Positions 1 through 54,832 of a stretch of DNA of 64,000 bases are shown here, piece by piece. This DNA is from Perkinsus chesapeaki ATCC PRA-425 (lineage: Eukaryota > Protista > Perkinsozoa): NCBI GenBank assembly GCA_013115145.1, contig JAAPAO010000007.1, positions 62,001 through 126,000 of the forward strand, given 5' to 3'. Position 1 is the first letter of the stretch, and every line of letters begins with the position of its first letter. Position numbers and translations under genes: made by a program. The notes beneath the pieces are model-generated. The model did not search any database and was not told the DNA's origin. It saw nothing but the letters and a program-made list of their open reading frames with translations.

Positions 1-3000
1 TTCGCCGACAGGGTGCTGCCGAATCTGGCTACCGATCTGCAAGAAAGACTGGAACCTAGAGAAAGGTTATCCAACACGCTCAGCTTAGATGCCAGCCTGG
101 CGAATGACCTAAGTGAGATCGTAGAACCCAGGCTGCTCAATGATACGACAGAAAGGCTGGAGCCGGTACGCAGCAGGCCAAGTAACGAGAGGTCACAGCC
201 CATGCGAGTGAACTGCCGAACTGATAGAGAACTGCCCAAGTGAGTGAAGCCGATGGTGGATATCTTATAGATTGACCCTATCCTGGCGAGACCAAGGACA
301 GAAACACCACTACCTAGTCGAGTCATCGATCTTACAGACAGGCTGCTACCCAGGACGGCAAAGTCGACCAGAGTCAAGTCGCTTCCTAAGCGTGCGAAAG
401 ACCTCAGCGAAAGGGCGGAGCCGAAGTGGACGCTATCAAAGACTGATACTTGGCTACCAAAGCTTGCGGCGGAAAAAGCGGACATGACGCTACCAAACCT
501 TGCCGCCGACCTCAAAGAAAGCGAGCTTGCCAGGCCAACAAAATCGAAGACCGAATAGCAGCTGCCGAACCTAGCATAGCTCCGCACAGATAGGCTGCTG
601 CCAAGGTGAACTTCATCAAGTACAGAGAGAGCCGCTCCAACGCGAGACTGGGAGATAATCGACAGTCCGCTGCCGAGCCTGATAAAGCTCCTCAAAGACA
701 AGCTGCTACCGATGGCAGTAGAATCGAGAACAGTTAGCGACGAACTGAATCGCGCGAAAGACCTCAGCGAGAGCGAGGACCCGAAGCTGCTTTGACCGAC
801 CAGCGACATGGATGACCCCATGTAGCAGAACGATCGGAGAGAGAGCGTGCTACCGAATTCTGCCGAATCTAGTATAGACGTCTTGCTGCCGAGCCTAGCA
901 AACGACCTCAAAGAGAGGCTCGAACCGAAGAGGCCTCCAGCGATTACAGACAATTTATAAACCGAGCCGATTCGGGCAAGACCAGTTACAGATAAGCCAC
1001 TCCCGAAGCGAGCAACCGCGTGTAGTGACAACGAGCTCCCAAGTCCACAAGCGTCCAATACAGTCAAGCTCGCACCGAGTTGAGTGGAAGATAGAGCAGA
1101 GAGTGTGCTGCCAAATCGACTGAATGACCTCAGAGACAGCGAACTGGCTAGCTGAGAGGATGCAATCACCGACAGCTTGTAAACGGAGCCAACGCGTGCG
1201 AGGCCGTAAGCACTGATACCGCTACCGAATCGAGCTACGCTCCTCAGAGACAAGGAGCTGCCTAAGCCCACTGTGGCGAGGACAGTTAGGCTGGAGCCTA
1301 GTCGAGTCGAACCAAGAACAGACTGGGAACTACCAAACCTCATGAAGCTCCTGAGAGAGAGCGAGCTTCCAAGCAAAGCACCATCCAAGGCAGACAGACC
1401 GCTACCGAGGAAGCCACTGAGTGCTGCAGAGAGCGAGCTACCAGCTCTACAGAGGGACCGTACTGATAGAGAGCTACCAAGCTGCGCGTACCCAATGACC
1501 GAAGCCTTGGAGCCTAGGCGAGCAAAGGATCGGAGAGACAGAGAAGACCCGAATGCGGTACCGTCCAGAACGCTAGTGGACGAGCCCAGACGTGCAGCTG
1601 ATGCCGCGGAAAGGGTGCTTCCAAAACGCACGAGGGAACGCAAGGACAGCGAGCTGCCACAGGTTACGTGGTCTAGAACGGTAAGAGACGAACCTACTCT
1701 TGCAAGACCAACGGTAGACACCGCCGATCCGAGTCGAGCTATAGCCCGCAAGGACAAGGAGCTCCCGAGAGTGGTGAAGTCAAGAACGGATAGCTTGGAG
1801 CCAAACCTTGCGAGTGACCGAAGCGATAACGATGACCCACAAGTAGTTGCATCCAGAACGCTCATGGTGCCAGACAAGACGCTATCGCCGAACACCGATA
1901 CTGAGCTTCCTAGGCGGGCAAACGAGCGCAAAGATAAAGTGCTACCGAAATTGGTCATGCCAATCACGGAGAGTTCCGCGAGTGACTCAACTCGGAGCAC
2001 TCCGGCAACCGATAATCCGCTACCGGCTCTCACAACTGACCGGATTGACAGACTACTGCCAAGAGTAGTGAAATCAAGAACCGATAGATGCCCACTTAGC
2101 CTGGCGAATGACCGCAGTGAGAGTGACGATCCAAATGCTGCCTCACCAACCACGGATAAGGAGTCGCCAACCCGCAACCAAGAGTGTACCGAAAGCGAGC
2201 TACCAAGCCGAGCAAAATCTCTTAGGGACAGCGAACTGCCAAGTGTACAGACTTCCAAAGCAGAGAGCTTGCTACCTAACCTGGCAAACGATCGCATCGA
2301 CACCGATGAGCCAAAGCTGGCAAAGCTCAATACCGAAAGGTTTTCCCCTATCGATGCACCTTTCAGAGTAGAGATCGAGCTGCCGAGCCTTGCGAAGGCT
2401 CGGAGGGAGAGTGAGCTCGCGAAACTAGCCTGAGCTACGGCGGAAAGGCTATATACAGAGCCAATCCTTGCCAACCCAAGAACAGACACCGAGGAGCCGA
2501 GCCTCGCCATGCCTCTCAAAGACCAGGCGCTACCAAGTTTGACGAAGTCGAGAACGCTAGCTGAGCTTCCTAGTCTAGCAAATGATCGTAAAGACAGGCT
2601 AGATGCCAGATGTGTCTCTTTGACAACCGACATTGCATTACCGAGTCGGGCGCGACCCACTATCGAGAGGGAACTGCCGAATCTGGCGACGGACCTCAGG
2701 GACAGTGTACTGCCCAAAGCAGTGCATGTGAGCGCTGACAAGGAGCCTCCGAGCCTGGCGAAACTTCTTAGAGAAAGACTGCTGCCGAAGCCAGCGCTTC
2801 CTAGAACCGACATGCTGCTGCCAACGATCGCTTGCCCGAGGCAGGAAAGTGAGCTGCCTAACCTTGCCATAGCCTTCAATGAGACAGCACTACCGCAGTT
2901 CACGTAATCTAGTACACTCAATTTGCTGCCGAGTCTGGCAAAGGAGCGAAGAGAGAGCGAAGATCCCATGGCGCCTTGCCCGAGAACCGTGAGAGAACTA

Positions 3001-6000
3001 CCCGCGTTACAGCTACCGAAGGTCGACAGAGTGCTGCCGAGCCTCGACACCGCTCGTAAGCTAAGCGAGCTTCCAAATGATGCCCCATCGAAGATGGACA
3101 AGGTGCTACCGATGTTAGCTCTGCTGAAGACACTGAACGTGCTGCCGGCACGGCAAAAGCTTCTCAAAGAGAGACCGGAGCCGAAGGTAGCCATCGAGAC
3201 CGCTGAGACCGATGAACCTATACGCGCGACAGCTAAGACACTCAGTGACGATCCGGTTCGGATGAAGTTGCGAATCGACAGGGAGGAAGAGAACTGGGAG
3301 TATTCCACAACAGATAGGCGACCGCCGACTCTTGCTCGGCCGACAACAGAGACTTCACTGCCGAAGCGAGTAAATCCACGAACGGACATAGCTGAGCCCA
3401 TCAAGACGTAGTCGAAGATGGACACGGAAGAGCCTATCCTGGAAAGACCGAAGACCGAAAGCCTTCCACCAAGTCGACCAAAACTGGCCAGGGAAAGGGA
3501 GCTGCCGAAACCAGTGCAGTCGAGCACACTAAGACCCTTGCCTATGCGTGTGGAGTGGTATACTGAGGCAACACTGCCGATCCTAGCAAGAGAGCGTAGT
3601 GATAGAGCAGATGCGAGCGATGTAGCGTCGAATGCAGATAAGGTAGAGCCTAGACGCGTACTGGATAGCACACTCAAGTTGGAACCAAACCGCATAGAGG
3701 CTCGAAGGGACATAGAGCTACCTAGAGCCACATTGTCCAGAACCGACAAGGCACCGCCCATCCTAGCAGCGCTGAACATGGACAGCCCAGAACCCAGTCT
3801 GACGAAATCACGCAGCGAGAACGAGCTACCAAGGTTACAAAGCTCGAACACCGTGATGGAACTGCCGAACCTGGAGACCGAGCGGATCGAGAGGTTGCTG
3901 CCAAAATTAGCATAGTCGAAAACAGAGGCCGTACTACCGAGCCTACCGAAAGACCGCAGAGACAGTGACGAGCCGAAAGCAGATGCTCCAACGACCGACA
4001 GATCATGAAGGGAGCCGAGACGTGTGAGGCCGGCTACCGATACCGTGCTGCCAAACCTAGCGAAGGCTCTCAGTGATAGCGATGATCCCAAGTCGACGAA
4101 GTTCAGGACTGATATCGAGCTAGCAAGTCTGGATGCTCCGAACACCGAGAGCGTGCTGCCGAGCCGAGTGAAGGCGTTGAGAGAGAGGCTGCTTCCTAAG
4201 TTTGTCATATCAAAGGTCGAAAGGGGTTTGCCGTAGCGGGTTATCGCAGCAAAGGACACGCCGCTGCCAAACCTCATGAAGCTTCTCAAAGACAGGGAAC
4301 TTCCGAGAACTGCCGCGTCCGCAACAGACACTCTTGACCCGAACCGAGCAAATGATCGTAGGGAAAGAGATGAGCCAAATGTAGCACCTGCCACGACGGA
4401 AAGCTTGTACACAGAAGCCAGTCGAGTAACACCACCGACTGATAAGCCGGAGCCGAGTCGGGCGAAGCTCCTGATTGACAGGGCGCTACCGAAGATCATG
4501 GCATCAAAGGCAGATAGTCGCTTACCGAAGCGGCCAAAGGAACCAAGTGATACGGAGCTACCAAGATTCACCGAGTCGAGCGCACTAAGCGTCCTCGTTA
4601 AGCGAGAAAGACCGGTGATAGAGCAGCCGCTTCCTAGGCGCATCAGACCCCGGAGCGAGAGAGAACTGCCGAAACTGGTTGCGTCAAGAGCAGAGAGAGT
4701 TCGTCCAAACTGAGCTTGACTGAAAACGGAAATTTGGCTGCCGAATCGACCAAGGGACCGCAAGCTTAGTGAGCTGCCGAGGCTGACGAAATCAAATACA
4801 GAGGTAGGCGAGCCAAGTCGAGTGAAGCTGGTCACCGACAGAGTTGAGCCGAACGTACCATAATCGAGAACGGACAAAGCAGAGGCAAGCGTGGTAGAGC
4901 TATACACAGACATACTGCTGCCGAAGCGCGACACTGCCCGAAGAGAGAGGCTGCTACCGTAGGTCGTAGCATCGAGCACACTGAGAGAGTCACCGAGCCG
5001 AGCATCGGACATAACCGAAAGGACACTGCCTAGGCGCACAAAGGACCTCAGCGATAGACCAGATCCAAGTGCCATTGCACCCAATACACTCATAGAGCCG
5101 CTAACGCGTGACTTGCTAGTGAGTGACAGTGAGCTTCCCAGGCGAGCACTCCCTCTCAACGACAGGGAGCTACCGAGAGCAGCATAACCTAAGATGCTAG
5201 CGGATGCTCCGAGCCGTGCAAACGAGCGCAGAGAAAGAGAAGACGCCAGCTCTGTTTGGGCAATGACCGACAGCTTGAACACCGAGCCTATACGGGTCAA
5301 CCCAGCAACAGATAAGCCGCTGCCAACACGAGCGAAGCTGCGCACCGACAGAGAGCTACCCAAAGCAGTTCCAGCAATAACCGATAGCTTATATACAGAA
5401 CCTACCCGAGCCAAGCCAACAACGCTCAGACCGCTGCCAATTCGAGTGAACTGTCGAACCGATAAGGAGCTTCCGAGACATGCGTACTCCAAAGCACTCA
5501 AGGCACCGCTGACCCTGGCAAATGCTCGAACCGAAAGGGACGATCCGAGGTCAGTGAATCCGACCGCAGAGCAAGAGCCACCGAACCTAGCCCAACTAAG
5601 CGAGCTGAGGGCACTTCCAAGCCTTCCAGTACCAGCAACAGATATGCCGCTACCTAGTCGTGCGTGGGCACGGAGAGACATAGAGCTACCACAAGTGGCA
5701 AAGTCCATAACCGTGACTTTGGAGCCCATCCTGGCGAAGCTTCGCAAGGACAACGAGCTACCGAAGTCAGCTAGACTGGTTACAGACATGGTGCCCATAC
5801 CAATCATGTTGCCGACAATCGATAGAGAACTTCCCAATCGAGCAAAGCTTCTCAGTGACAAGGCGCTGCCGACATCAGTCTGTGCTATGACAGAAAGTCG
5901 GTACGCTGAACCCAAGCGGAGCAGACCGACCATTGACAAACCGCTGCCGAGTCTGGCTACATTACGGAGGCTCATGGAGCTACCACAACTAGCATAGTCC

Positions 6001-9000
6001 AAGACGGAGAGTTTGCTGCTAAGACGAGTGAGGCTTCGTAAACTGCATGAGCTACCGAAGCTAACTGCATCCAAAGCACTCAGTGTACTGCCGGTTCGTA
6101 ACCATCCCAGAGAGCTCGTCAATGAGCCGATATGCAGTCCAGTGGTAACCGATAGGGTGCTGCCAAGGCGACCGAATGAACGGAGGGAAAGGGTGCTTCC
6201 GAAGGAAGTGCACGCCAGGACACTCATCTTCTCTCCTACGCGTGCGAAGAACCTCAACGATAACGAGGAGCTCAATGATGCCGCTTCCAACACCGATACT
6301 TGACTCCCGAGTCGTCCAAATCCACGCAGCGAAAGGGTGGAACCGAAAGCAACTTCGTTAAGTACCGACAAGGTCGACCCTAAGTTTGTTGCGGCGAAAA
6401 CAGAAGCGACACTTCCCAATCTGGCCATGGTCCGTAAAGAGAGAGATGAGCCGAAGTCTGTGCTATCTAGGGCAGACAACTTGCTTCCGAACCTCGCTAA
6501 CGAGCGTAGTGACAAAGACGATCCAAATTGAGCTGCTCCTAAAATGCTTGTAGTGTCACCGAGCCGAGTCCAGGACAGTAAGCTCGCCGTCGAACCACCG
6601 CGTATCCCGTCGAAGACAGAGACAGTACTACCAAATCGAGCAAAGGAGCGGAGAGATAGACTGCTTCCAATAGCAACTTGGCACAGGGCGGAGCTTTGAC
6701 TGCCTAAGCGGGCAAACGATCGCAATGATAGGGAAGACCCGCAAGTGCTGCTGGCAAGAACTGAGATGGCACTGCCGCACCGAGACACTCCCGATACCGA
6801 TAGAACGCTGCCAAAGCGCACGAGAGTGCGGACGGATAACGAGCTTCCAAGGGTAACATAGTCCAGGATAGACGCAGATGAGCCAACACGGCCAAAGGAC
6901 CGGAGCGACAACGTTGAGCCAAAATTGCTGCAACCCAAAGTAGAGATAGAATCTCCCAGTCTAGTTGCTGACAACACAGAGGCCGTCGAACCAAGTCGGG
7001 CCATGGCTCTCAATGACAAGGAACTAGCAAAGCTTGATGTGGCGATAACAGATAGCTTATACAGAGAGCCAACACGTGCCAGGCCAGTCACCGAGATACC
7101 GCTGCCGAGTCTAGCCACCGAACGGAGGGACAACGAGCTCCCTAAGCATGCATAGTCAATGACCGTCGTTTTACTGCCGAGTCTAGCAAAAGACCTCAAG
7201 GACAGACTGGACGCGAAGGATGTCTTGCCCAAGGCAGACAAAGTAGAACCGAGCCTACACTGCGAGAACACGCTGGCGCTGCTGCCAAGTCTAGCAAAGG
7301 ATGTCAGGGAGAGAGCGCTACCCAGTAGTGTGAAGTCCAGTATGCTAACCTTAGAGCCGGTTCTAGCAAACGACCTCAGAGAAAGGGAGGAGCCAAGATC
7401 GGCGCAGGCGAGTGTGCTTGCCTTACTGCCGAAGCGAGCAAAGCTTCGCAAAGATAGCGAGGAACCAAAGGCAGTCGTACCGATGACGGACATACTAGAG
7501 CCGACCCGAGCAGCCCCATAAACCGAGCACGAACTACCGATCCTCAAAGCGGCCCTTAAAGACAGCGCACTGCCGAGGCAAGTACGATCAAGAACTGTCA
7601 ACTTGCTACCGAGCCTTGCAAAGCTTCTAAGGGAAAGCGATGAGCCCAGAGTTGCCTCTTCTACTGCGGAGAGAGATTGGCCTACTCTGACAAGCCCTTG
7701 TAGAGAGACATTGCTGCCTAGCCTGGCGAAGGATCGCAGAGACAAGGAGCTACCGAAGGTCATACCGGCTATGACGGAGAGGTCGTACACCGAGCCCAGA
7801 CGAGCTAGCCCGAAGACGGATACACCACTGCCGCAGCGAGCCATCGCCCGAACGGACAGAGAGCTGCCGATGAGCACGTAATCGAGAGCGCTAACCTTAC
7901 TACCAAGCCGGGCGAAAGATCTCAGGGACAGCGACGAGCCAAACTCGGTCTGCGCAAGGACTGATAGGGTGTCTCCAAGACTTGTAGAGGCAATCGCCGA
8001 TAGTGAGGACCCAACATTAACAGTACCAACCATCGAAAGGGAACTTCCGAGACGAGCGAAGCATCGCATAGATACGCTGCTGCCTAAAGTAGTGTAGTCC
8101 AAAGCGGAGAGCTTGCCACCTAGTCTGGCAAAGGTGCGAACGGACAAAGAGGAGCCAAGCTCAGCCTGTGCCACCGTGCTGAACCCAGAACCGAAGCGAG
8201 CAAAGGATCGCAAGGATAGAGAAGAAGCGCAAGTAGTAGCAGCTATAACGGAAAGCTTGTAGACCGATCCGATCCGAGCGAGCCCAACCACTGAAAGGCC
8301 GCTACCAACGCGGACAAATTGCCGCACCGACAGGGAGCTGCCGAGGTTTGTGAAGTCTAGAATACTAGTCTTGCTTCCGATCCTCGAGAAAGACCTCAAA
8401 GAAAGAGCGGAACCGAACTGGACGGAGTCTACTACGGACAATGTCGAACCCATCCTCGTATAATCAAGGACAGATAGCGAGCTAGATACTTGAGCTGCAC
8501 CAGTAACAGAGATGCAGCTGCCTAGACGGGCAAAGCTTCTCAGTGAGAGGCTGCTTGCGAGGTGCTGGGATGCTATCACAGAAAGCTTGTAAACTGATCC
8601 GATCCGGGTAAGCCCCTTCACAGACATACCGCTGCCAAGGCGTGCCATCGAACGCAGCGAAAGAGAAGAGCCCAGATCGACCTCAGATAGAACACTGCTG
8701 CTGCTACCAAATCGACTGAAGGACCGTATTGACAATGTGCTACCGATCTGACCGAAGTCGAATAAGCTCATCGACTGACCTAGTCGTGCAAGAGATTGCA
8801 GAGACATAGTGCTGCCGAGACGAGCACAGGACCTCAGTGAGAGAGAGCTGCCGAAACTCGCCTGTGATATCACAGACAAGGAGTATACTGATCCGACGCG
8901 AGTGAGGCCAGTGACAGATAAAGTACTCCCGAGGCGAGCGGTACCACGCACCGATAACGAGCTGCCAAGTTGTACAAAGTCAAGCACGCTAGCGTAGCTC

Positions 9001-12000
9001 CCGAGACGAGCGAAGGACCTTAGCGACAGCGAGGAGCCGAATGCAGTTGACGCCACCGCTGATAGAGAACTGCCGAGCGATGCAGTCTGGACGACTGACA
9101 GCGAGCTACCAATACGAGCTAAGCTCCGGACCGATAGCGAGCTAGCAAGAGTTGTGTAGTCAAGGACTGAGACTGAGCTACTTAAACGAGCAAAGGACCT
9201 CAGTGACAGCGTAGAGCCAAAGCTCCCTGCAGACAAGACTGAGACGCTACTGCTAATACGGGCCAAGCCGGCTACAGAAACACTACTTCCCATCCTGGCC
9301 ACTGCTCTTAGAGACAAGGAGCTCCCGACGGTTGTAGAGGCTATAACAGAGAGCTTATACATTGATCCAACTCTGGTGAGACCGAGGACCGATAGCCCAC
9401 TGCCGAGCCTTGCGAATGCGCGCAAGCTGAGCGAGCTTGAAAGACAGGCCGTGTCAACCACAGAGAGCTTGCTGGCCAGTCTGACGAAAGAGCGCAGAGA
9501 GAGGGAAGATCCCAAACCGATCTTGCCGATAACACTGAGGCTATCCCCGACGACACTCTTCCCGAGGACAGAGACTGTGCTGCCTAGCCTCAACATATCT
9601 CGCAAGGACAGGGAACTACCTAGAGTAACAAAGTCTAAGACAGTGACGTCGCTTCCAAGTCGAGCAAAGGAGCGCAAGGAGAGCGACGAGCCCATAGTAG
9701 ATGCGGCGATCACAGAAAGCTTGTAAACCGAGCCCACGCGACAGAGGGCCGCAACCGATATACTTGAGCCGAATCGAGCGATGCTGCGAACAGATAAACT
9801 GCTGCCAAGTGAGACCGCATCAAGCACCGATAAGCCGCAAGCGAGACGACCAGCAGCGGTCGCAGATAAGCTACTACCGAGTCGAGCGAAGCTCCTCAAA
9901 GACAGGGAGCTACCGAAACCCGAGTCGTCAATCACAGAGAGTCTATAAACGGATCCAACGCGAGCTAGGCCAAGCACAGAGATTCCGCTACCGAAGCGAG
10001 CAACGCTGCGTAGAGACAGAGAGGAACCGAAGTGGACAGCATCCAAAGTAGAAAGGGTCTCGCCTAAGCGGGCACGCGACACTGTCGATAGACCGCTTCC
10101 GCAACGACAGAAGTCACGTAGAGACAGAGAACTGCCGAGAGTCGTGAAGTCAAGAATAGACACACTGCTGCCGAGTCGAGCGAATGAGCGAAGAGATAGC
10201 GATGAACCAAATGCGGAGGTTGCTATAACTGATAGGTCATATACCGAGCCGATTCTCGCTAGACCTGTTACGGAAAGACCGCTGCCGATCCTGGCGAATG
10301 ATCGCAAAGAGAGCGAGCTCGCTAGGTTAGATGCTGCAATTACCGATATGCGGTAAACTGAACCTATTCTAGCTAGGCCACAAACTGACACACCGCTTCC
10401 GAGTCTTGCCATGGACCGTAGAGAGAGCGAACTCCCCAACAGACTGTAATCCAGTACAGTGACTTTACTGCCACACCGAGCAAAGGAACGGAGCGACAAG
10501 CTCGAGCCGAACTCCGTTGCGCTCATAATCGAGAGGGCAGAACCGATAGTTGCCGAGCTCAGTGTAGATAGGCCACTACCCAAGCGAGCAGCTGCACGAA
10601 CTGAGAGGGTGCTGCCTAGCACGAGGAAGTCGAGAACCGAAGCCTGGCTTGCTAAGCGAGCGAAGCTGCGTAATGATAGAGATGATCCTAACTCACTCTG
10701 TGCAATGATCGATAACGACTCGCCCAGTTCGGCACTGCCCAGGACAGATATAGAGCTGCCGAGACGAGCGAAGCTCCGCAGTGACAGAGAGCTTCCGAAA
10801 CCACTACAAGCGATAACCGAGAGCTGATACACCGATCCTACACGAGCGAGCCCATAGACAGAGGCTGAAGACCCAACGCGAGCTACACCACGTAAACTAA
10901 GAGAGCTCCCGAGAGTCACGAAGTCGAGAACGCTCAGTTTGCTACCGAAACGGGCGAAGGACCTCAGAGACAGCGAGGAGGCCAAACTTGCGTCGGCTAT
11001 GGTAGAGAGCTTGTAAAGGGAACCAAGACGCACTAAACCGGTTATCGAAATACCGCTGCCCAACCTAGCAAAACCTCTGACAGAGAGGGAGCTACCGATA
11101 CCCACGGCTGCGATAGCAGATAGTTTATAGACGGACCCTACCCGTGTGAGACCAGTAACAGAGAGGCCACTGCCGAGGCGAGCCATGGACCGCAGTGACA
11201 GGGAGCTACCGAGAGTGATGCAACCAAGAACTGTCGACGCACTCCCTAGCCTGGATAGAGAACGTAGGGAGAGGGACGAACCAAAGGCTACTTGGCCGAT
11301 AGTAGAGAGGCAGCTGCACATTTGCACCCGGCTAAGCACAGAAAGGCCACTGCCAAGCCTAGCAATAGCGCGAAGAGACATAGAGCTGCCCATTATAGCC
11401 TGATCTATCACAGACAGCTTATAAACAGATCCTACTCTGGCCAACGATGCTACGCTAATACCACTGCCGAAGCGCACAAACGACCGAAGGGAGAGTGAAC
11501 TGCCGAAGGACGCAGCTCCGATCACACTCAAATTGCTGCCCAGTCTGGCCATGCCTCGAAGAGACAGTGTAGAGCCAAATGACGCAGCAGATATGAGACT
11601 CATGGAAGAGGAGAGTCGAGCCCAACCTAGTATTGAGAGATGCGAACCAAACCTGGCACACGATCTTAGTGAGAGGGCGCTGCCAAGGTAGGCGCTGTCG
11701 ATGGTTGACAGCTTATAGAGAGAACCAATACGTGCTAGGCCGGTGACGGACACTCCACTGCCAAATCTGGCTACACCGCGGAGCGACAAAGCACTACCGA
11801 GAGCAACGTTGTCCAGAACAGTGAGTTGGCTTGCAAGCCTAGCAAACGAGCGCAGCGAGAGGGAGGATCCGAAGTGAGCGTCAGATGCTACTGAGAGAGC
11901 AGCACCCAACTGAGAGTCGGCGAAAGCAGAGATAACACTTCCAAAGCGTACAAGAGATCGAACAGACAGGCTGCTACCGAGGGTGGTGAAGTCGAGGACA

Positions 12001-30000: not shown

Positions 30001-33000
30001 AATGAGCTAATGCTACTGCCGAACCGACTGAACGAGCGGAGTGACAGGGAGCTGCCCAAAGTGGCGAAGTCAAATACAGACAGCGAGCTGCCAAGTCTTG
30101 ATACGGATAGGATCGAGACTGTAGAGCCTACTCGAGCCAAGTTTCTAAGAGAGATTGCGCTGGAGAGGCAGGCGAAATCAAGCAGCGACAAGGAAGACCC
30201 GAGGCGCGCACAGCTCAGAGCTGTTAGTGAGCTACCCAACCGGAAAAAGGCTCTTGTAGAAAGAGAGCTGCCGAGGTGGGCCTCCGAGACCGTGGAGAGG
30301 TAGGCTCCGGTTCTCATGCCATCGGCGACGGACAGACTGGATCCCAGACGAACATGAGCACGCAGGCTTAGAGAGGATCCAAGGGTTGCATAGTCTACCA
30401 TGGACATGGAACTACCAAACCTGGAGGCGCCGAAGAGAGATATAGTAGAGCCCATGCGAAAGAAGCTTCTTAATGACTGAGAACTGCCGAGGCTGACCCA
30501 GTCGAGAGTGGACATACTGCTGGCTAGCCGGGTAACCGAGAAAACCGAGAGCGTGCTGCCCACTCGGGAAAAGGTCCTCAAGGATAAGGAGGAGCTCATA
30601 CTGCTGTAGTCCAGAACAGACATAGAGCTAGCAAGTCTAGCTAGACCAATAACAGATATCGCAGAGCCAGCTCGGGCAACGGCTCGGATGGATAAAGTTG
30701 AGCCGAAGGAAGCACTATCTAGCAAGGACATGCAGCTGCCGAACCTCACCATACTGAAGACCGATAGCCTGGAGCCCAGGCGAACGTAGCTCCGCAGAGA
30801 GCAAGAGCTGCCAAAGTTGGCAAAACTTAGGACTGATGCGGACTCACCGAGCCTGGCCAAGCCAAACATAGACAAGGAGCTACCGAGTCTAGCTAGGGAC
30901 CTTACCGACATGGAGCTGCCCAAATGTAGGAAATCTAACACGCTCGCACTGGAGGCGAGACGGTTGCGGCCCACAGTAGAGAGAGCGCTACCGAGGCGGG
31001 AGAATCCTCGAAGACTAAGAGAACTACCCAAGTGGACGAAGTCAAGGGTGGACATACTTCCACCTAAACGGTACGATCCGAATGCAGAGACGCTAGATCC
31101 GAGTCGAGCAAATGACCGCAGGGAAAGGCTACTGCTGAGTAGAGCCTGACCACAGGCTGACAAGCTGTCACCGACTCGTGCACGGCCAAAAGCTGACAAA
31201 CTACTACCAAACCGAGCAAAGGTTCTCAAAGAGAGGCTGCTGCCAAGCCGAGCGAAATCCAGAACGGAAACGCTGGAGCCGAGCCGAGCGCCTTCTAGAA
31301 GGGACATAGAGCTACCGACGCGGAGAATCTTACGGATAGATAGAGCACTGCCCAAAGAAGCAAAGTGCATAACGCTCATGCTACTGCCAAATCGTGCACC
31401 GGCAAAGACCGAGAGGGTAGAGCCCAGCCGGGCAAAGGAGCGCAGGGACATGCTCGACGACAGCCGGGCGGCGTCGAGAACGGATATAGATCCGCCTACC
31501 CTGGCTAAGCCGAACGCAGAGAGGCAACTACCGAAGCGGGCCAAACCGCGGATTGAGATCGAAGAACCAAGGTGGGTAAAGTCAACCAGTGATATCGATG
31601 AACCGAATCGACCGACACCAAAGATGGAGAGGCTGCTGCCTAGGCGGCCATAGGACCTAATGGACAAGCCCGATCCAATTTGGAAGAAATCAGTAACCGA
31701 GATGGGAGCCACTGCTCGGAGCTCTCCAGTAATAGAGACCGAGCTGCCCATCCTGGCAACACCACGCAGCGATAGACAGCTGCCGAGCATGAGATAATCT
31801 AGAACAGACAGAGAACCAGCGAGTCTCGTTCGATCAAATACTGTCAGACTGCTGCCCAGTCTGCTGACACCTCGTAGTGAGAGAGTAGAGCCTAGCTGAG
31901 CAAAGTTGAGGATCGAGACCGATGAACCGATCCGACCTCCACTCAATGTTGACAATGAGCTTCCTAGTCGCATCGCTGCACGAAGAGATAGCGACGAGCC
32001 AAGAATGAGGTAGTCCAGAATGGAGGTAGAACGGCCTATTCTAGTATTAGTGAACACTGATAGAGAGGAGCCGAGTCTGGCCAGAGACCTGAGGCTCATC
32101 GAGCTGCTGCTCGCCACGCAGTCCATCACCGATAGTGCGTCTCCAAGCCTTGACAGCCCATAGACAGAGATATAGCTGCCCATTCTGGAGACAGACCTTA
32201 CCGATAGTGAAGAGCCAAATTGTGTGTAGCTCAAAGCCGAGAGCACGCTGCCGAATCGGGCAAGACCGTACACACTAACAGCGCTACCAAAGCGCATGAA
32301 GGAGCGCAGTGACATCGTAGAGCCAAGCATGACAAAGTCTAGGATAGACCCGCTGCTGCCTGCCCGGAGTAGCGAAACCATCGACAGAGATGATCCCAGC
32401 CTAGCAGTTGACCGAAGGGAAAGACTGCTGCCAAGAGAGGCGAACTCCACCAGTGACATACGGCTGCCGAGACGGGCCTCACCGAAGGTCGAAAGATATG
32501 ATCCGAGGCGAGCGAATGATCTCAGAGATAGGGTACTACCAAGCTCGACGGAGTCAAGTGTGGATAGCGTTGACCCCAGCCTGCCCATACCAAACAACGA
32601 AAGCGCCGAGCCACCTCTGGTGAATCCTCGAATAGACAAGGTACTGCCGAGATCGACGAACCCCAAGGTGGAGAAGGAGCTACCACAGCGGGCCATGGAG
32701 AAGGTCGAGATGGTGCTCCCGAGACGAGCGAAGGTCCGGAGGGACAGAGAACTCGAAACGGCAGTGTAGTCGAGAGCCGATAAGGATGCTCCAAAGCGGG
32801 CAGTGCTGCACAAGGACAGAGTGCTGCCAAGGCGGCCAGTTCCCCGGACACTCAGGCTGCTACCCAGCTGAAGGAAATCCAAGACAGTTGCGGAGCATCC
32901 CAGTCTGGCAAGGTCGAACATCGACAGTGAGCTACCGAGCCGAGCGTAGGTCTGTAGGGAGAGGGAACTGCCCAAGTGGAGGAAGTCGAGCACAGAGACA

Positions 33001-36000
33001 GAAGATCCGAGCCTGGTCCTGTCGAAGGCCGAGACCGAGCTGCCAAGTCTAGAGAAGCTCCTGAGAGATAGAGAGCTGCCAAGGTGGCTGTGATGGAGAA
33101 CGGAGAGAGCGCTGCCCAGCCGAGCTACACTGTAAACCGATACACTTGAGCCGAGGCGCGCTGTAGATCTAAGGCTCAAGGAACTTCCTAGAGTGGTCGA
33201 ATCGAACAGAGATATGGTAGAACCGAGTCTAGCACAAGAGAAGGCACTCAGTGTGCTGCCAAGCTTGAGGAAGCCTCTAGCACTGATAACGGAGCCGGTC
33301 CACAGAGAACCATGGATGGAGAAAGTGCTGCCTAGGCGAGCATAGGATCTGATGGATAAAGCGCTACCAAGGCCACTGTAGTCCAGGACAGATAGCTTCT
33401 TCCCAAGCCTCGCCCAGGAAAAGACTGAGATGTTGCTACCGAGACGAGCGCATGCTCTGACCGACAGGGAGCTGCCCAGGGCAAGATAGTCCAGTATGGA
33501 CAAGGAGCTGCCAAGCCTCGATGAAGAGTACACTGACAACCCGGATCCCAGGCGACCGGTAGCCCGCACGGAGAGGGTCGATCCCAGATCGCAGAGCTGA
33601 CGGGCCGAGAAGTAGTCTGAGAGCTGTGTCGAGCCGAAGACTGAGAGAGTACTGCCCAGTCTGATGAAGGACCGTAGGGACATCGACGACCCGAACTGGA
33701 CGTAGTCGAACACTGACGCTGAGGAACCGAGACGAGAATACCCAAAGACTGACAGAGCGCTGCCAGCTCGGGCAAATGACCTAACCGATAGCGTCGACCC
33801 TAGTGTGGCGTAGGCGAGCATGGAGAGATCACTACCGAGACGGGCTGAGCTGAAAGCCGAGACCGAGCTGCCGAACATGCCCATAGCACGGAGAGATAGG
33901 GAGCTGCCCAGCCAAGAGTGATCCAGGGCGCTGATCAAAGATCCGAACTTGGCCATGCCGTACAGAGACAGGGTGCTACCCGAGCGGACAAAGCCTCGCA
34001 GAGAAAGCGCGCTTCCTAATGCGACAAGGTCGACAGTGCTGAGCGACTGGCCAAGCCTAGCGCCACTGAAGACCGTGAGGCTGCTTCCGGCACGGAGAAG
34101 CCCACGCAGCGACAGGGAGCTACCTACCAGGCTGTAACCGAGGACAGAGATGCCAGATCCGATGCGAGCGGAGCCAAAGGAAGACAAGCTCGACCCTAGA
34201 CGGGACATGGCTCGGAGGGAAAGGGAGCTGCCGAGATCAGCCCACGCCAGGCTCGAGACAGAGCTTGCGAGCCTGGCAGCTGCTGCCAAGGATAAAGTAG
34301 ATCCGAGCCTAGCCACTGCACGCAGAGACATCGACGAGCCGAGAGCGAGGAAGTCGAGAACCGACGAGCTGCCGCCGATCCGCGCTCCACAGAAGGTCGA
34401 GAAGGTAGAGCCAAATCGAACTAGGGACCTCACAGAGAGGGCGCTGCCGAGGTGGGAGAAGTCACAGACGGACATCCCCATACCCAAGCGGGCCGAAGCA
34501 TAGGACGACACCGATGACCCAAACCTCATCAATGAACGCATGGACAGTGAGCTTCCAAGCCCGACACAGTCCAGGACCGAAACGGTGAGCCCCAGTCTGG
34601 TCGTAGAGAAGACCGACGCCATTCGACCAAACCGAGCGTGCTGCTGGAGGGACAAGGTGGATCCTAGGGTAACGTAATCGAGAACGGAAAACGAGCAACC
34701 GAGGCGACTTAGACCGGCCACCGAGAAGGCTGATCCGATGCGAGCATGGCCTCTCAAGGAGAAGGCACTACCAAGATGAACAAAGTCGAGGACCGAAACT
34801 GAGTCGCCCATCCGGCTCATACCGTATACCGAGATGCGGCTCCCAAACCGAGAGAAGTCCCTAAGAGATAGAGAAGATCCTAAAACAGTGAAATCAAGCA
34901 CGGAAGACGACGAGCCTAAAGTAGACACTCCGAACAAGGACATGGTGCTGCCGGCACGAATGACCCCACGAACCGATAAGCACGAGCCTAGTGCGCTGAG
35001 GTCTAGAACACTGAGACCGGAGCCGAGCCTAGTAGTGCCGAATATAGAAACTGTGGAGCCCATCCTAGCAGCTGACCTCAGTGAGAGTGCCGAGCCAAAC
35101 GACAGCTGCCCTAGAACCGAAAAAGAACTACCTAACCTCGAGGTGGCGTACACAGATAGGGTACTGCCTAGCCTCGAACTGGACCGAATACTCATGCTAG
35201 AACCCATTGTGAGGTAATCGAGCACCGACAGGCTTTGGGCGAATCTGCTCGCTGCCGCAACCGAAACGGTGCTACCAGCTCTAATGAACGAGCGAAGAGA
35301 TAGAACACTGCCAACAGCTACGAAGTCCAACACTGAGATGCTACTGCCAAACCGTGACACGCCATAGGTCGAGACGTGGCTGCCTAGGCGGGCCACTGAC
35401 CGCAGGGACAGTGCGCTGCCCAACGCTGTGAAGGTCATCACAGACAGAGCCGAGCCTAGCCGCGTCGTCGCCAGGAGAGAGATAGTACTCCCAAAGCGAG
35501 CAAACGAACGTATTGACATGGACGAGCTCAGTGTCGCGAAGCCCAGACTTGAAATCTGAGAGCCGAACCTTGTCTGGCTGAAGACCGAGATAGTGCTTCC
35601 GAGTCGGATAAGGCTGCGTAGAGAGAAGGCACTGCCGAGGTTCACGCAGTCATACGTGGACAGTACGCTGCCAAGGCGAGCCAAGCTAAAGACCGATACT
35701 GCAGAGCCAGCTCGGAAGAAGGCCCTCAACGACATGCTGCTGCCCAAGGCCAACATGTCCAACATAGAGACTGAGCTGCCCTGGCGAACCTTACTATAAA
35801 CCGAGAGAGAGCTACCGAACCTCATGCTCGAACGGATGGACATGGTACTGCCCAGGTTGACAAAGTCTAAGACAGACATGCTGCAACCGATGCGAGCCAT
35901 GCCGTAGGCTGAGCAGCTCGAGCCGAACCTAGAGAAGGATCTTATAGAGATAGCACTGGCTAGGTTGGTAAGGTCCAAAATGGAGAGAGAACTGCCCATA

Positions 36001-39000
36001 CGAGCTTGGCCAAACAGACTGAGCGTGCTGCCAAAACGGGCAAAGTTGCGGACGGAGAGGGAGCTGCCGAGGGCCATAAACCCGAGGGTCGAGACCGAGC
36101 TAGCCATTCTCGCCACAGCAAAGACCGAAAGACCGCTGCCAGCTCTGGCGAAAGTTCTCAATGAGAGTGACGAGGCACAGGTGGCGAAATCTAGCAGGGA
36201 TATCTGCGACCCTAACCTGGCCATACCAACCACAGAAAGGCTGCTGCCGAGGCGAGCAAAGGATCGCAGTGACTGGGTCGAGCCTAGAGCCGCAAAATCG
36301 AGCACAGTAACGGTGTGGCCGAAGCGCGCTAGACACTCTAAGGAAAGAGAACTGCCAAGGCGAGCAAATGCCCGTAGAGAGAGAGCACTGCCACCTAGGC
36401 TGAAGTCTAGCACAGAGAGGCTAGAGCCAAGTCTGGAGCAACCGAAAACTGAGACCGAGCTGCCAACTCGACCCAAGGCTCGTACCGATAGTGCAGAGCC
36501 AATGGCTACGCTGTCCAAAGCGGAGAGTGTGAGACCAAGACGAGCTCTGCTGAATACACTGAGGGTGCTGCCGAGCCGAGCGAACTGACGCATGGAGACA
36601 GTGCTGCCAAAGTGGGCCGCGCTAACCACGGAAAGGTGACTTCCTAGTCTACAGAGACCGAAGGCCGAGACAGAGCTACCAAAGCGAGCCAAACCACGCA
36701 GAGAGAGAGCGCTCCCCATAGCCGAGAAGTCGAGAACGCTGGCGGTACTTCCAGCACGAAGACAACCAAACGTCGATACCGTAGAGCCGAAGCGGGCGAA
36801 TGACCGCAGTGATATGGTGCTGCCGATCAGTGTGTAGTCCAGCACCGACAACGAGGACCCGAGCCTCGCCCAACCGTAGGCTGATAGAGTACTGCCGAGC
36901 CTGGCCTGGCCACGGAGAGACAGCGATGAACCCATCAATACAAAGGAGAGAGCAGACAAGCTGTCACCGAATCGGCTCAGGCAGTGGGCGGACAAGGCAG
37001 AGCCGAGCCTGGTAAAGGCTCTAGTGGAGAGTGCCGAGCCGAGGTTGATGAGGTCCAGCGCTGTAATGCTGGCACCGATGCGAGCCAGACCGACCGTGGA
37101 TAGAGCGCTGCCGATGCGGGCCAGGTTACGAAGAGATAGGCTGCTACCGAGCTGGAAGAAGTCTAGGATGCTGACTGTCGATGCCAGACGGGCTAGGCCG
37201 ACCAAAGAGAAGGAACTGCCAAATCTGCCGAACTCCCTCAAGGACAGTGAGCTGCTCAGTACAGCAAAATCTAGTATAGAGGCTGATGAGCCAAACCGCG
37301 CCAAACCAAAGGCAGAGACAGTCGAGCCCATACGAAGGAAGGACCTCAGTGAGAAAGTGCTGCCTAAATGGGCAAAGCCTAGCACGGAGAGAGAGGTGCC
37401 GAGCCGAGCTTGGCCATAGACAGACAGCGCAGAGCCGGCCCTTGCCGCCGATCTCAAAGACATGGACGAGCCCAGGTGAACCCAGTCCAGGACGGACACA
37501 CTGCTGCCGAGCCTCGCCATACCGAAGGCTGAGACACTTGACCCGAGCCTGGAGAAGGACCGGAACGATAGCGAACTGCCAGTGTGAGCGTAGTCTAGAA
37601 CGGATAGATTATCGCCTATGCGAGCACCGGCCACCAACGATAGAGAGCTGCCGACCCGGACGTACTCCCTAAGGGACAAGCTGCTTCCCAGAGTTGAGGA
37701 GTCCAGGAGTGACAGAGCCGAACCGAAGCGTCCAAGACCGCACACTGACAGAGCACTGCCGAGCCTGTTCACCGCTCTGAGACTCAGGGAGGATCCCAAA
37801 GCCGACGCATCTAGTATAGAGAAGCCGCTGCCCATACGGAAATGGGTGTGCATGGACAAGGACGATCCTAACCTTGCTGCTGCTCGAAGAGACAATGTGC
37901 TGCCTAGGGCTATAGAGTCCAGGACAGATAGGCTGGAACCAATACGAGCCAGACCATAGAAGGAAAGGCCAGAGCCAAACCTAGTAAAGCCTCGGATGCT
38001 CATCGCCGAGCCGAGGTTGGCGAAGTCCAAACCGGAAAGCGACGAGCCGAACCGTGCCATGCCGTAAACCGACACCGATGAGCCAGCTCGAGCGAAGCGA
38101 TGAAGAGACAGAGAGGATCCCATGGTTGTGAAGTCGAGCACCTGAAGAGCAGCATGTCAGCCAGGCGGCAGGCTCGTACACTTACGCTCAGGCTGGCGCC
38201 AAGGACGGCACGATCGAATATACTGCACGAGCTACCTATCCTAGCAAAGCCTCTCAGACTCAATGACGAACTCAGAGTTGTGAGATCCAGAACGGAGAGA
38301 GATGCTCCGAACCGAGAGGTTCCGTATCTGAGGACGCCTTCAACGGTCTAGGGGAGAGAGGCACGTACAGAGAGGCTGAGCTGCCCAGTCTCATGAAGGA
38401 CTGCAAGGATAGTGCGCTGCCGATATTGATGAAATCTAATGTGGTCAGAGATTGGCCCATACGAGCTCGACCTAACAAACGACTATCGCTGAGCATGTAT
38501 TCGAAGCTCGACCCTTACCTGCAACCGACATGTAGCTTCCCAGTCTGAAGGATGCCCTTATCGATGCCGAGCTGCCCAGAGCAATCTACACAGGCAGCGC
38601 TCATCCAGGCCGCTCCAGGCCGACGAGTATTTCCTTACCCAGTCCAGTACGGAGAGGCGGCTTCCAAGCCTTGTTGTGCCATATAAGGACAGTGCGCTGC
38701 CAATCCTGGCATACGTTCGGATCGAGGTCGAGCTACCGAACGTTGCATAGTCCAGAACCGATAACGACGATCCAAACATCTAACAAGAGTAATCCGGGGA
38801 GGAACAGAGGACGGTCCTACCGCCGAGTTGAAGAGAGATAGGCCACTGCCAAGCTTAGCGAAGTTGTATACAGACAGGGAGCTGCCCATTGAGACATAAT
38901 CGAAGATGCTGACCGTGGAATGCAGAACTGCTGAGCCGTACACCTAATAGGCAGACAGTAAGAGTGTATTTCCATACGTTAAGGAGATCCCTACGCTGAG

Positions 39001-40162
39001 ACCGTAGCCAGACTCTGGTGCACCACTTTGAGGATCTGTAGGCTCCGAGTTACCGATGTTGATGAAGCCCTAAACATGCCATCACCGGCTGTGCTAGCTA
39101 GGATGTCCTACGTGAACGGAGAGGCTGGATCCGACTCTACCAACCTCCTGGACGCTTATGGTGCTGCCGAGGCGGACAAAGGACCGCACAGACAGGGTCG
39201 AGCCGAGCACCACACGGTCGTACATATGCCTACAGACAAGCAAACCAACTCCATCGAGATGAGGCCCCCAACATTCAACCTACACATAGTTCCCCAAGCG
39301 AGCGAATCCCATAACGGAGATCTGTGGTCTCTTTGATGCATCTGGATCCTCGGGGTCGTCGGGTTTACCTAGGCAAGTGGAGGGTGAAGAGTCCACTGAG
39401 ATCAGACCACATCGCACCAGGTCGCTTGGTCGAAATCCAGAGATTCGAGAAGAACTGAGCCTGCCTCCAGAAGGCCGACTCGCCCGTCACCGACAACGCA
39501 GCCGAGAAATGAACGGCTTCTTCAACCTGGCAAGCATCCGTGGGAAGCATATCCTGCCCGTCCCATGGCGTACCGAAAGCGACTTCTTAAAGACGGCCAC
39601 GTCGAGCACCTCCATTGAACTGTTAAATATGGCCTTTTTGTAATATCGAGGGAGCTCAGCTAACATGCCGAATTCAAGTAGATAACTTTCAAAAGAGTCT
39701 ACCTGAACCATCCGGTGCAGCTATCATAGCTCCTCCTTCTCGTTGATCATCCAACATCAATATCAACACTGATACCGGATCGGCACCTAGGATGCATAAC
39801 TATCTCGTCAGCAGGCGCCGTCTTCTTCATGCTCACCGATGATGTCGTGGGCCATAATGTGTAAATCGGTCTTCATTTCAACTCCTGTAAGTTCTTTTTT
39901 CGCCACAAAATCCCACTGTGGCAGGCCGTGCTTATTCAAAGCAAACCTCGAGGCCTATACCCGCAATACCAACGCTCACATAGGCAGCATCCAGCCTACC
40001 TGTGCGGGGCTGGGGTCGACCGTCAATGGCCCCAACAGTGTTATATCACCACGTCGACCAACTAGCACCCACCCTTGGACGAGCTGAAATGACGGAGTAA
40101 ATAGAGCATTCGGCGGTGTAAGGATCTACCTGTAGTGGCAGGATTAATAACCACAGTATCAT
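1..40162 (-). CDS. Giant secreted tandem-repeat protein (at least 13,169 aa, 3'-truncated by the window); about 1,050 copies of a 12-aa Ser/Leu/Gly/Arg-rich repeat, probable beta-solenoid
   Basis: Manual translation of the minus frame (codons at + positions 3k..3k+2) gives e.g. LGSSLSCRSVARFGSTLSA at 3-59 and ARFGSGLSVTGLARIGSVYKLSVI near 950-1020. The ORF track lists no minus ORF in this frame over 1-38 kb while both other minus frames are fragmented, as expected if the frame is stop-free to the window edge. Spot checks found no stop; I did not check every codon. Exons (+ coordinates): 40130-40162, 40000-40083, 39837-39954, 39703-39786, 39574-39659, 39418-39526, 39284-39368, 39112-39229, 38995-39069, 38821-38943, 38639-38779, 38519-38585, 38369-38471, 38186-38327, <1-38141. 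All introns are GT-AG and all phases are consistent. The N-terminus is MILWLLILPLQLVQG-WVLVGRRG (signal-peptide-like). Confidence 0.9.
38142..40129 (-). other. Cluster of 14 short spliceosomal introns (41-54 nt) of the giant repeat gene
   Basis: Introns at 38142-38185, 38328-38368, 38472-38518, 38586-38638, 38780-38820, 38944-38994, 39070-39111, 39230-39283, 39369-39417, 39527-39573, 39660-39702, 39787-39836, 39955-39999 and 40084-40129. Example: 38142-38185 reads GTAAGTG...CTCTTCAG on the minus strand. Removing them restores an open frame and the repeat register. The donor of 39369-39417 (GTGCGA) is the weakest call. Confidence 0.85.
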
Positions 40163-54724: not shown

Positions 54725-54832
54725 CGACAACAACAACAACACCGAAGTGTAGAACAGTTACAGTAGGGCTACGACAACAACAACAACACCGAAGTGTAGA
54801 ACAGTTACAGTAGGGCTACGACAACAACAACA
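54725..54832. repeat. 47-bp direct tandem duplication (about 2.3 copies) containing (CAA)n
   Basis: The unit cgacaacaacaacaacaccgaagtgtagaacagttacagtagggcta starts at 54725 and 54772 (identical copies), with a partial third copy at 54819. Confidence 0.9.

What the first reader, a model, noticed from the sequence alone, without database searches (positions are those of the whole stretch)
1..39300. 12/24-aa repeat predicts a beta-solenoid filament hundreds of nm long with Ser ladders
Seen: a strict 12-aa (36-nt) period, G-S-x-L-S-[VL]-x-x-F-x-x-[LI], mostly alternating a 'VLDFVx' unit with an 'LRSFAR' unit to give a 24-aa super-repeat, with about 1,050 units. Established: short repeats with a Gly turn and regularly spaced hydrophobic residues typically form beta-helices or beta-rolls with about 4.8 A rise per coil. 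Inference: a single-chain rod of about 250 nm (24 aa per coil) to 500 nm (12 aa per coil) with stacked Ser, Arg and Asp ladders. Candidate roles are a sporangial or cyst wall scaffold, flagellar hairs, extrusome filaments, a functional amyloid-like adhesin, or a flat surface binding polysaccharide or mineral.
Basis: inference. Interest (0 to 1): 0.78.

Follow-up and report, generated by a model that had tools for sequence, protein, structure and literature searches.

The report
Giant sugar-fibre core protein gene
This is a real gene for a protein of more than 12,900 amino acids built from about 1,070 copies of a 12-residue unit; it matches a family shown in 2025 to form three-chain, sugar-coated fibres, so it is probably a micrometre-long trimer and not the single-chain coil first proposed.

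Summary
The minus strand carries a stop-free frame from 38156 to 3 (12,718 codons) that runs off the window. Short 5' exons extend it to about 39312. The main exon splits into 1,054 units, 1,019 of them exactly 12 aa, with G1 89%, S2 85% and S5 97%.

One detail is wrong. The dominant super-repeat is 36 aa, made of three unit types (LSLRSFARL, SVFGxARL, SVLDFxxL), not 24 aa. 24-aa doublets and a 14-aa variant appear only in the C-terminal-side half.

GSxxSx7 is the motif of the TLP-12 glycofibril (bioRxiv 10.1101/2025.09.30.679562). That fibril is three parallel chains in a triple beta-helix, with large O-glycans on S2 and S5 and a helical rise of 9.6 A per unit. Its candidate source proteins, giant alveolate proteins, carry a C-terminal S74 autocleaving chaperone domain.

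Homologues with 38-59% identical repeats carry Pfam Peptidase_S74. This gene's own C-terminus lies outside the window. The AlphaFold monomer is all-beta but low-confidence and matches no known solenoid.

Predicted length in the window is about 0.8-1.0 um. No RNA evidence was found.

The scan already reported a sister gene on another piece of this genome. This is a new member of a known kind.

The parts
3..38141 (-). Giant last-visible exon: 12,713 codons with no stop, running off the window start, so the C-terminal part of the protein is missing. It is made entirely of GSxxSx7 units.
   Evidence: splice acceptor CTTCAG ending at 38142
21956..38120 (-). Zone 1 (about aa 13-5,400): near-perfect 36-aa super-repeat (B-C-A)n, including uninterrupted runs of 45, 76 and 36 super-repeats.
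12903..21955 (-). Zone 2 (about aa 5,400-8,418): B-C-A triplets mixed with 24-aa B-A doublets.
3..12902 (-). Zone 3 (aa 8,419 to the window edge): B-C-A, B-A and B-C-K patterns. K is a 14-aa variant, GSVYKLSVIAxxxF, i.e. an A-type unit with two residues inserted between S2 and the second Ser. There are 29 copies, between window 12902 and 278.
38186..38327 (-). Exon (142 nt) encoding ...YGTSRF GASLSVLDLTTL SSSLSLRGFARI GSSCSIFDRAVL GASLS. It is followed by a 44-nt intron, 38185-38142 (GTAAGT...CAG). The 12-aa register is kept across the junction.
38369..38471 (-). Exon (103 nt) encoding RARM GQSLTTLDFINI GSALSLQSFMRL GSSAS(L); the intron 38368-38328 follows it (GTACGT...CAG).
38519..38585 (-). 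Exon (67 nt) encoding IAL GSSASIRASFRL GSYMSVA(G); the intron 38518-38472 follows it (GTAAGG...TAG).
38639..38779 (-). Exon (141 nt) encoding MF GSSLSVLDYATF GSSTSIRTYARI GSALSLYGTTRL GSRLSVLDW; the intron 38638-38586 follows it (GTAAGG...TAG).
38821..38943 (-). Exon (123 nt) encoding VY GSAVLHSTVSIFDYVSM GSSLSVYNFAKL GSGLSLFNSA; the intron 38820-38780 follows it (GTAGGA...TAG).
39112..39312 (-). Tentative first two exons (39312-39284 and 39229-39112), with a candidate start ATG at 39312 (MGFARLGNY...) or 39226. The protein would begin directly with repeat units, and no signal peptide is seen. The join to the next exon (intron 39111-38944) does not keep the 12-aa register and is uncertain.
   Evidence: no RNA support

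Best explanation
The gene encodes the protein core of a TLP-12-type glycofibril. Three identical chains would run in parallel and intertwine into a triple beta-helix with a triangular cross-section. Each 12-residue unit contributes two short strands (about residues 4-6 and 10-12) on two adjacent faces. Gly1 and the small residues 1-3 sit at a corner, and the bulky residues 4, 6 and 12 face the core. Ser2 and Ser5 point outward and carry large O-linked glycans that form a continuous sugar shell. Folding and trimerisation would be started by a C-terminal S74 intramolecular-chaperone domain that then cuts itself off. At 9.6 A per unit, the roughly 1,074 units in the window give about 1.0 um of fibre (0.84 um using the paper's 18 units per 14 nm). 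What is shown here: the gene, its unit structure, protein-level purifying selection, and homology to S74-bearing repeat proteins of alveolates. What comes from the paper: the trimeric fold, the glycans on S2 and S5, and the rise. What is inferred: that this particular protein trimerises, is glycosylated, ends in an S74 domain and is extracellular.
For: (1) Motif: G1 89%, S2 85%, S5 97% plus 3% Thr over 1,019 units; S/T occupies 1,930 of the two glycan positions. This equals the GSxxSx7 motif of TLP-12 (paper). (2) Bulky hydrophobic residues sit at positions 4 (90%), 6 (81%) and 12 (94%). Position 10 is small, Arg11 (61%) and Ser5 lie between them, and positions 7-9 break the alternation. This fits two short strands per unit, as in TLP-12, and not one long strand. 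There are only 5 Pro in 12,718 aa. (3) Homology: 1,383 cluster representatives at E<=1e-3 and 53 at E<=1e-30. P0005, P0008, P0010, P0001, P0003, P0273 and P0276 have 38-59% identical repeats of the same B/C/A types. Each is followed by Pfam PF13884 Peptidase_S74 (E 1e-9 to 1e-13, above the cut-off) and the S-D-x-R-[LM]-K motif typical of the S74 cleavage site. (4) Named relatives are alveolates: Symbiodinium necroappetens and S. microadriaticum, Dinoflagellata sp. MGD, Vitrella brassicaformis and Chromera velia. The neighbouring PNO gene is closest among named proteins to Amoebophrya sp. A120, at 64%. (5) Extracellular context in relatives: a weak, sub-threshold TSP1 match in the Vitrella protein; VIT plus VWA domains with a signal-peptide-like N-terminus in P0281; and, in the Chromera protein, a source label of Sushi domain (no Pfam hit here) followed by a hydrophobic transmembrane-like stretch. 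(6) It is a real coding gene. It has 0 stops against about 390 expected. Ser2 and Ser5 use all six codons of both classes (AGY 64% and 13%). Codon-position identity between super-repeats is 0.47/0.65/0.31, and five introns preserve the 12-aa register. The DNA is present in two independent sequencing studies.
Against: The C-terminus of this gene is outside the window, so its own S74 domain was not seen. There is only an unchecked scan note of an autocleavage domain 27.8 kb further on. No RNA run holds the stretch, so expression and the 5' exon model are unconfirmed. No signal peptide is visible at the candidate N-terminus or within about 800 nt upstream, which sits oddly with a heavily O-glycosylated extracellular fibre. 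The paper assigned TLP-12 to alveolate proteins by fit of a degenerate motif to the density and by fold search, not by proteomics. The paper's reference proteins could not be fetched for a direct alignment. No trimer could be modelled with these tools. A word-based search for 5,500-17,500-aa relatives found none.
Confidence: 0.78

Rival explanations
1. Single-chain beta-solenoid or beta-roll rod. One chain coils on itself with 12, 24 or 36 residues per turn, making stacked Ser, Arg and Asp ladders without obligatory glycans or trimerisation.
For: The AlphaFold2 monomer with a 33-row self-alignment is all beta, with GS turns every 12 residues. A 36-aa super-repeat could equal one triangular coil. 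There are weak profile similarities to left-handed beta-helix LpxA (E 0.08).
Against: Mean pLDDT is only 62.8, and two of the five models fall below 32. Foldseek finds no solved solenoid (best TM 0.13-0.26, E>=0.012). The nearest ESM Atlas shapes are a mixed bag of elongated models. Close homologues carry the S74 domain, whose known role is folding trimeric triple beta-helices. The solved fibril with this motif is a trimer. Mixed 24/36/38-aa spacings in zones 2-3 would break a fixed coil size.
Confidence: 0.08
2. A related but different assembly or location. It could be an intracellular or wall-embedded beta-filament (bactofilin-like polymer, cyst or sporangial wall scaffold, extrusome thread) that shares the repeat but is not a free glycofibril.
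For: No signal peptide was found. The core is very basic, with net charge +774 and pI about 11.7. A distant S74-bearing relative, P0029, gives sub-threshold-stretch bactofilin hits.
Against: Conservation is strongest exactly at the two glycan-bearing Ser and the corner Gly. Alveolate relatives show signs of an extracellular or membrane setting: VIT and VWA domains, a weak sub-threshold TSP1 match, and a transmembrane-like stretch.
Confidence: 0.11
3. Not a functional gene: a satellite-like array, or a dead gene that happens to stay open.
For: No RNA run holds it. There is no Pfam family for the repeat.
Against: It has 0 stops in 12,718 codons against about 390 expected and 194-766 in the other frames. 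Third-codon positions are near saturation (31% identity) while second positions stay at 65%. Ser is conserved through both codon classes. Introns keep the repeat register. A homologue, P0005, comes from a transcriptome assembly.
Confidence: 0.03

Closest known systems
TLP-12 glycofibril and its candidate alveolate source proteins (e.g. Amoebophrya sp. A120 A0A8J1ZHD7: 19,853 aa, 1,263 GSxxSx7 repeats, C-terminal ICA domain); Li et al., bioRxiv 10.1101/2025.09.30.679562
   Same: The same dodecapeptide, with invariant Gly1 and Ser at positions 2 and 5. More than 1,000 tandem units in a giant protein. Alveolate neighbourhood. Homologues end in an S74/ICA domain.
   Different: Here the units fall into three types in a strict 36-aa cycle over the first roughly 5,400 aa. 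A zoned C-terminal half follows, with 24-aa doublets and a 14-aa insert variant. The core is strongly Arg-rich. This gene's own ICA domain, trimer state and glycans are unverified. The paper reports no super-repeat or zonation in the text read.
Viral triple-beta-helix fibres with a C-terminal S74 intramolecular chaperone (phage K1F/endoNF endosialidase tailspikes, phage T5 L-shaped tail fibre; Pfam PF13884)
   Same: The same C-terminal domain family in this protein's homologues, including the S-D-x-R-x-K motif typical of the S74 cleavage site. A parallel homotrimeric beta-helical stalk as the expected product. The nearest ESM Atlas clusters are viral hypothetical proteins.
   Different: Viral stalks are tens to hundreds of residues, not more than 12,000. 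They have no GSxxS glycan motif. This one is cellular, in a eukaryotic gene with spliceosomal introns.
Single-chain beta-solenoids (LpxA-type hexapeptide left-handed beta-helix, pentapeptide repeats, curli CsgA, beta-helical antifreeze proteins)
   Same: Short Gly-punctuated repeats with alternating hydrophobic residues, and a beta-rich prediction.
   Different: No significant sequence or fold match. The unit length and the Ser2/Ser5 signature differ. The homologous family is tied to a trimerisation chaperone.
Other CryoSeek glycofibrils (TLP-4 tetrapeptide, TLP-3 tripeptide and TLP-2 dipeptide cores)
   Same: Peptide repeats whose conserved hydroxyl residues carry a thick, ordered glycan shell.
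   Different: Those cores are linear threads without folded beta structure. The repeat here is 12 aa and forms a beta-sheet core.

Membership tests
TLP-12-type glycofibril core proteins | Tandem dodecapeptide with Gly at position 1 and Ser/Thr at positions 2 and 5 (GSxxSx7) | tested here: met
   1,019 of 1,054 units are exactly 12 aa; G1 89%, S2 85%, S5 97% plus 3% T
TLP-12-type glycofibril core proteins | Giant protein with on the order of 1,000 or more units | tested here: met
   At least 12,713 codons in one exon plus about 240 in the 5' exons, about 1,074 units, still open at the window edge
TLP-12-type glycofibril core proteins | C-terminal intramolecular chaperone autocleavage (Peptidase_S74) domain | not testable with these tools
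   The C-terminus lies beyond the window start. The feature is met in homologues P0001, P0003, P0005, P0008, P0010, P0273 and P0276 (PF13884 above cut-off). An unchecked scan note places an autocleavage domain 27.8 kb further on.
TLP-12-type glycofibril core proteins | Sequence homology to the alveolate candidates named in the paper | tested here: inconclusive
   The paper's accessions could not be fetched. Significant hits to Symbiodinium, Vitrella, Chromera and an unnamed dinoflagellate were found, but no Amoebophrya repeat protein was retrieved (one search was blank for 5,500-17,500 aa).
TLP-12-type glycofibril core proteins | Parallel homotrimer forming a triple beta-helix (C3, rise 9.6 A, twist -11.3 degrees) | not testable with these tools
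   Only monomer prediction is available; the monomer model is low-confidence (pLDDT 62.8). The hydrophobic pattern 4, 6 / 10, 12 is compatible.
TLP-12-type glycofibril core proteins | O-glycans on Ser2 and Ser5 | not testable with these tools
   Only indirect: these are the most conserved positions, and Ser is kept through both codon classes.
   pLDDT 62.8; Foldseek against the PDB best E 0.012 with TM 0.13; PDB profile search best E 0.08

The most novel reading that the evidence does not exclude
The fibre is built in zones along its length. The first roughly 450 units follow a strict three-unit cycle (net charge about +2, +1 and -0.6 per unit), which in an in-register C3 trimer would give an axial charge band every three units (about 2.9 nm). 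The C-terminal-side half switches to two-unit cycles and a 14-aa unit that moves the second glycan site by two residues. Such zoning would make a micrometre-long fibre with different glycan spacing, stiffness or binding along its length. Combined with a strongly cationic core and no visible signal peptide, this would be a variant assembly or export route not described for TLP-12.
Probability: 0.2. Interest if true: 0.6.

Novelty: new member of a known kind. Interest (0 to 1): 0.45.

Why it matters
TLP-12 fibrils were found in pond water with no source organism and no function. A sequenced alveolate genome carrying complete genes of this family gives a place to test three things: where such fibres are made, which glycosyltransferases decorate about 2,000 Ser per chain, and what the fibres do (coat, adhesion, host contact). 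The gene also shows that a repeat array of more than 38 kb can be held by purifying selection alone. Synonymous sites are saturated and there is no homogenisation. Such giant genes are also easily missed by ORF tracks and gene callers.

Tried and rejected
- Pfam on three 600-aa slices of the repeat: no family.
- PDB profile search: only LpxA at E about 0.08.
- Foldseek against the PDB with the AlphaFold monomer: nothing at E<=0.001.
- ESM Atlas by features and by shape: viral hypothetical clusters and unrelated elongated models, not diagnostic.
- Word-based search for 5,500-17,500-aa relatives: none at E<=1e-10. This says nothing about the ~20,000-aa proteins, which are out of range.
- RNA evidence: no RNA run holds the stretch. 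The two small runs guessed to be RNA laid nothing, so splice sites rest on sequence alone.
- Tandem Repeats Finder sees only two 2-copy arrays because the DNA repeats are about 48% identical.
- A signal peptide was looked for in all three minus-strand frames up to 40100 and not found.
They were read exon by exon.
The PNO neighbour only places it among myzozoan alveolates.
Full report
**1. What is in the sequence**

The + strand of 1-38,000 has a strong A-over-T skew (about 0.3) and GC of about 55%. Translating all six frames shows one stop-free frame on the minus strand, from 38156 down to 3. It has 12,718 codons and runs off the window. The ORF lister misses it because it touches the window edge. 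The other five frames of the same interval carry 194-766 stops. Base composition predicts about 390 stops in the open frame, and there are none.

The product is 24% Ser, 16% Leu, 11% Gly and 8% Arg, with only 5 Pro. Net charge is +774, pI about 11.7, and mass 1.3 MDa before any modification.

**2. Repeat anatomy**

A profile built from 36-aa blocks covers 12,004 of 12,718 residues, and no non-repeat domain is present. Segmentation gives 1,054 units: 1,019 of 12 aa, 29 of 14 aa and 6 of 11 aa. The main position frequencies are:

| Position | Residues |
|---|---|
| 1 | G 89% |
| 2 | S 85% |
| 4 | L 61% |
| 5 | S 97% (+3% T) |
| 6 | V/L 70% |
| 11 | R 61% |
| 12 | L/F/I 80% |

The super-repeat, however, is 36 aa and not 24. 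Autocorrelation is 0.426 at lag 36, 0.369 at lag 24 and 0.347 at lag 12.

There are three unit types:
- B: G-S-S-L-S-L-R-S-F-A-R-L, net charge about +2.
- C: G-S-x-L-S-V-F-G-x-A-R-L, net charge about +1.
- A: G-S-x-L-S-V-L-D-F-x-x-L, net charge about -0.6.

Residues 13 to about 5,400 are almost perfect (B-C-A)n, with uninterrupted runs of 45, 76 and 36 super-repeats. From about aa 5,400, B-A doublets are mixed in. From aa 8,419 (window 12902) a 14-aa variant, GSVYKLSVIAxxxF, replaces some A units. This agrees with another scan note on the same stretch.

**3. Is it a real gene?**

Several lines say yes.
- Super-repeats are only 48% identical in DNA. Identity at codon positions 1, 2 and 3 is 0.47, 0.65 and 0.31.
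- Identity does not depend on distance (0.483 for neighbours, 0.478 for distant pairs), and no pair exceeds 69%.
- Ser2 and Ser5 are written with all six Ser codons of both classes.

The array is therefore old, not homogenised, and held by selection on the protein. This also explains why Tandem Repeats Finder is nearly blind to it.

Upstream of 38141 the repeat continues in other frames. The pieces are joined by 41-54-nt introns with GTAAGT, GTAAGG, GTAGGA or GTACGT donors and YAG acceptors. Five junctions keep the 12-aa register exactly. The first two exons and the start (ATG at 39312 or 39226) are tentative, and no signal peptide is visible.

I read these exons one by one and did not join them for any search. 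The DNA is present, nearly identical, in two independent sequencing studies. No RNA run holds it.

**4. What it is**

Pfam has no family for the repeat. An exhaustive HMMER search with a 720-aa slice finds 1,383 cluster representatives, 53 of them at E<=1e-30. The closest have 38-59% identical repeats of the same three unit types and then a C-terminal Peptidase_S74 domain (PF13884, above Pfam's cut-off). All keep the S-D-x-R-[LM]-K motif typical of the S74 cleavage site.

Named relatives are alveolates:
- Symbiodinium species.
- An unnamed dinoflagellate.
- Vitrella, where the protein gives a weak, sub-threshold TSP1 match.
- Chromera, where the source labels the protein 'Sushi domain-containing' (no Pfam hit here) and a hydrophobic transmembrane-like stretch follows the repeats.

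An unnamed relative has VIT and VWA domains and a signal-peptide-like N-terminus. The neighbouring gene (about 43799-49404, + strand) is a pyruvate:NADP+ oxidoreductase. Its closest named relative is Amoebophrya sp. A120.

A scan note on a sister gene pointed to a 2025 study, which I found and read. The TLP-12 glycofibril was solved at 3.0 A from pond water. It has these features:
- It is a trimer of GSxxSx7 dodecapeptides woven into a triple beta-helix.
- Each unit has two short strands (residues 4-6 and 10-12).
- Glycans of about 7 and 11-14 sugars sit on positions 2 and 5.
- Helical rise is 9.6 A and twist is -11.3 degrees.
- Candidate source proteins are about 20,000 aa, from alveolates, and end in an ICA (S74) domain.

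The hydrophobic pattern here fits that two-strand topology: bulky residues at positions 4, 6 and 12, a small residue at 10, and Ser5 and Arg11 between them.

**5.

AlphaFold2 on 360 aa, with 33 in-register slices of the protein as its alignment, gives an all-beta model. Mean pLDDT is only 62.8 and pTM 0.59, and two of the five models fail. It matches no solved solenoid and only assorted elongated shapes in the ESM Atlas.

So beta structure is supported and a monomeric solenoid is not. At 9.6 A per unit, the roughly 1,074 units in the window give about 1.0 um. Using the paper's 18 units per 14 nm gives 0.84 um. If the gene really runs to the autocleavage domain noted 27.8 kb further on, it would have about 1,860 units and be about 1.8 um long. 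That figure rests on an unchecked note.

**6. Verdict**

The gene is best read as a new member of the recently described TLP-12 glycofibril family. A sister gene on another piece of this genome was already reported by the scan.

Still open are this gene's own C-terminal domain, its expression, its route out of the cell and its function.

Noticed in passing
window 43799-49404 (+): Pyruvate:NADP+ oxidoreductase (a PFO fused to a flavodoxin/FAD/NAD reductase). Two short 5' exons encode a Ser/Ala/Arg-rich N-terminus (MLSTKSLFTSSSAAARTVAAAASASRMRAF...) that looks like a mitochondrial-type presequence. The best named relative is Amoebophrya sp. A120 (64%); unnamed metagenomic proteins reach 74%.
   Followed up: partly
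window 54725-54832: A perfect 47-nt tandem repeat, 2.3 copies at 100% identity, in otherwise non-repetitive DNA.
   Followed up: no
P0029 and P0039 (hits): Asn-rich proteins of 2,783 and 3,620 aa carry a different 12-aa-like 'xLSVxG' repeat without the GSxxS signature. P0029 ends in Peptidase_S74 and gives bactofilin-like hits. P0039's source names it a bactofilin/phage baseplate protein, on a 748-kb contig. The repeat-plus-S74 design therefore extends beyond alveolates, probably to viruses or bacteria.
   Followed up: partly
P0145 (hit): A 2,125-aa protein annotated from the crab Petrolisthes manimaculis matches the repeat (E about 2e-20). It could be contamination from a parasite or symbiont, or a chance low-complexity match.
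   Followed up: no
window 40100-41300: An AT-rich stretch (GC about 45%) between the giant gene's 5' end and the next genes, probably the promoter or intergenic region. A small intron-containing ORF rich in charged residues lies on the + strand at about 41440-42300.
   Followed up: no
P0002 and P0272: Proteins of 1,570-1,780 aa from long ENA contigs match over more than 90% of the query at 28-32% identity. In P0002, whose sequence was read, many Ser/Gly are replaced by Pro/Leu ('LDSALLALD', 'GPSPF'). These may be decayed or diverged copies of the repeat in another genome.
   Followed up: no
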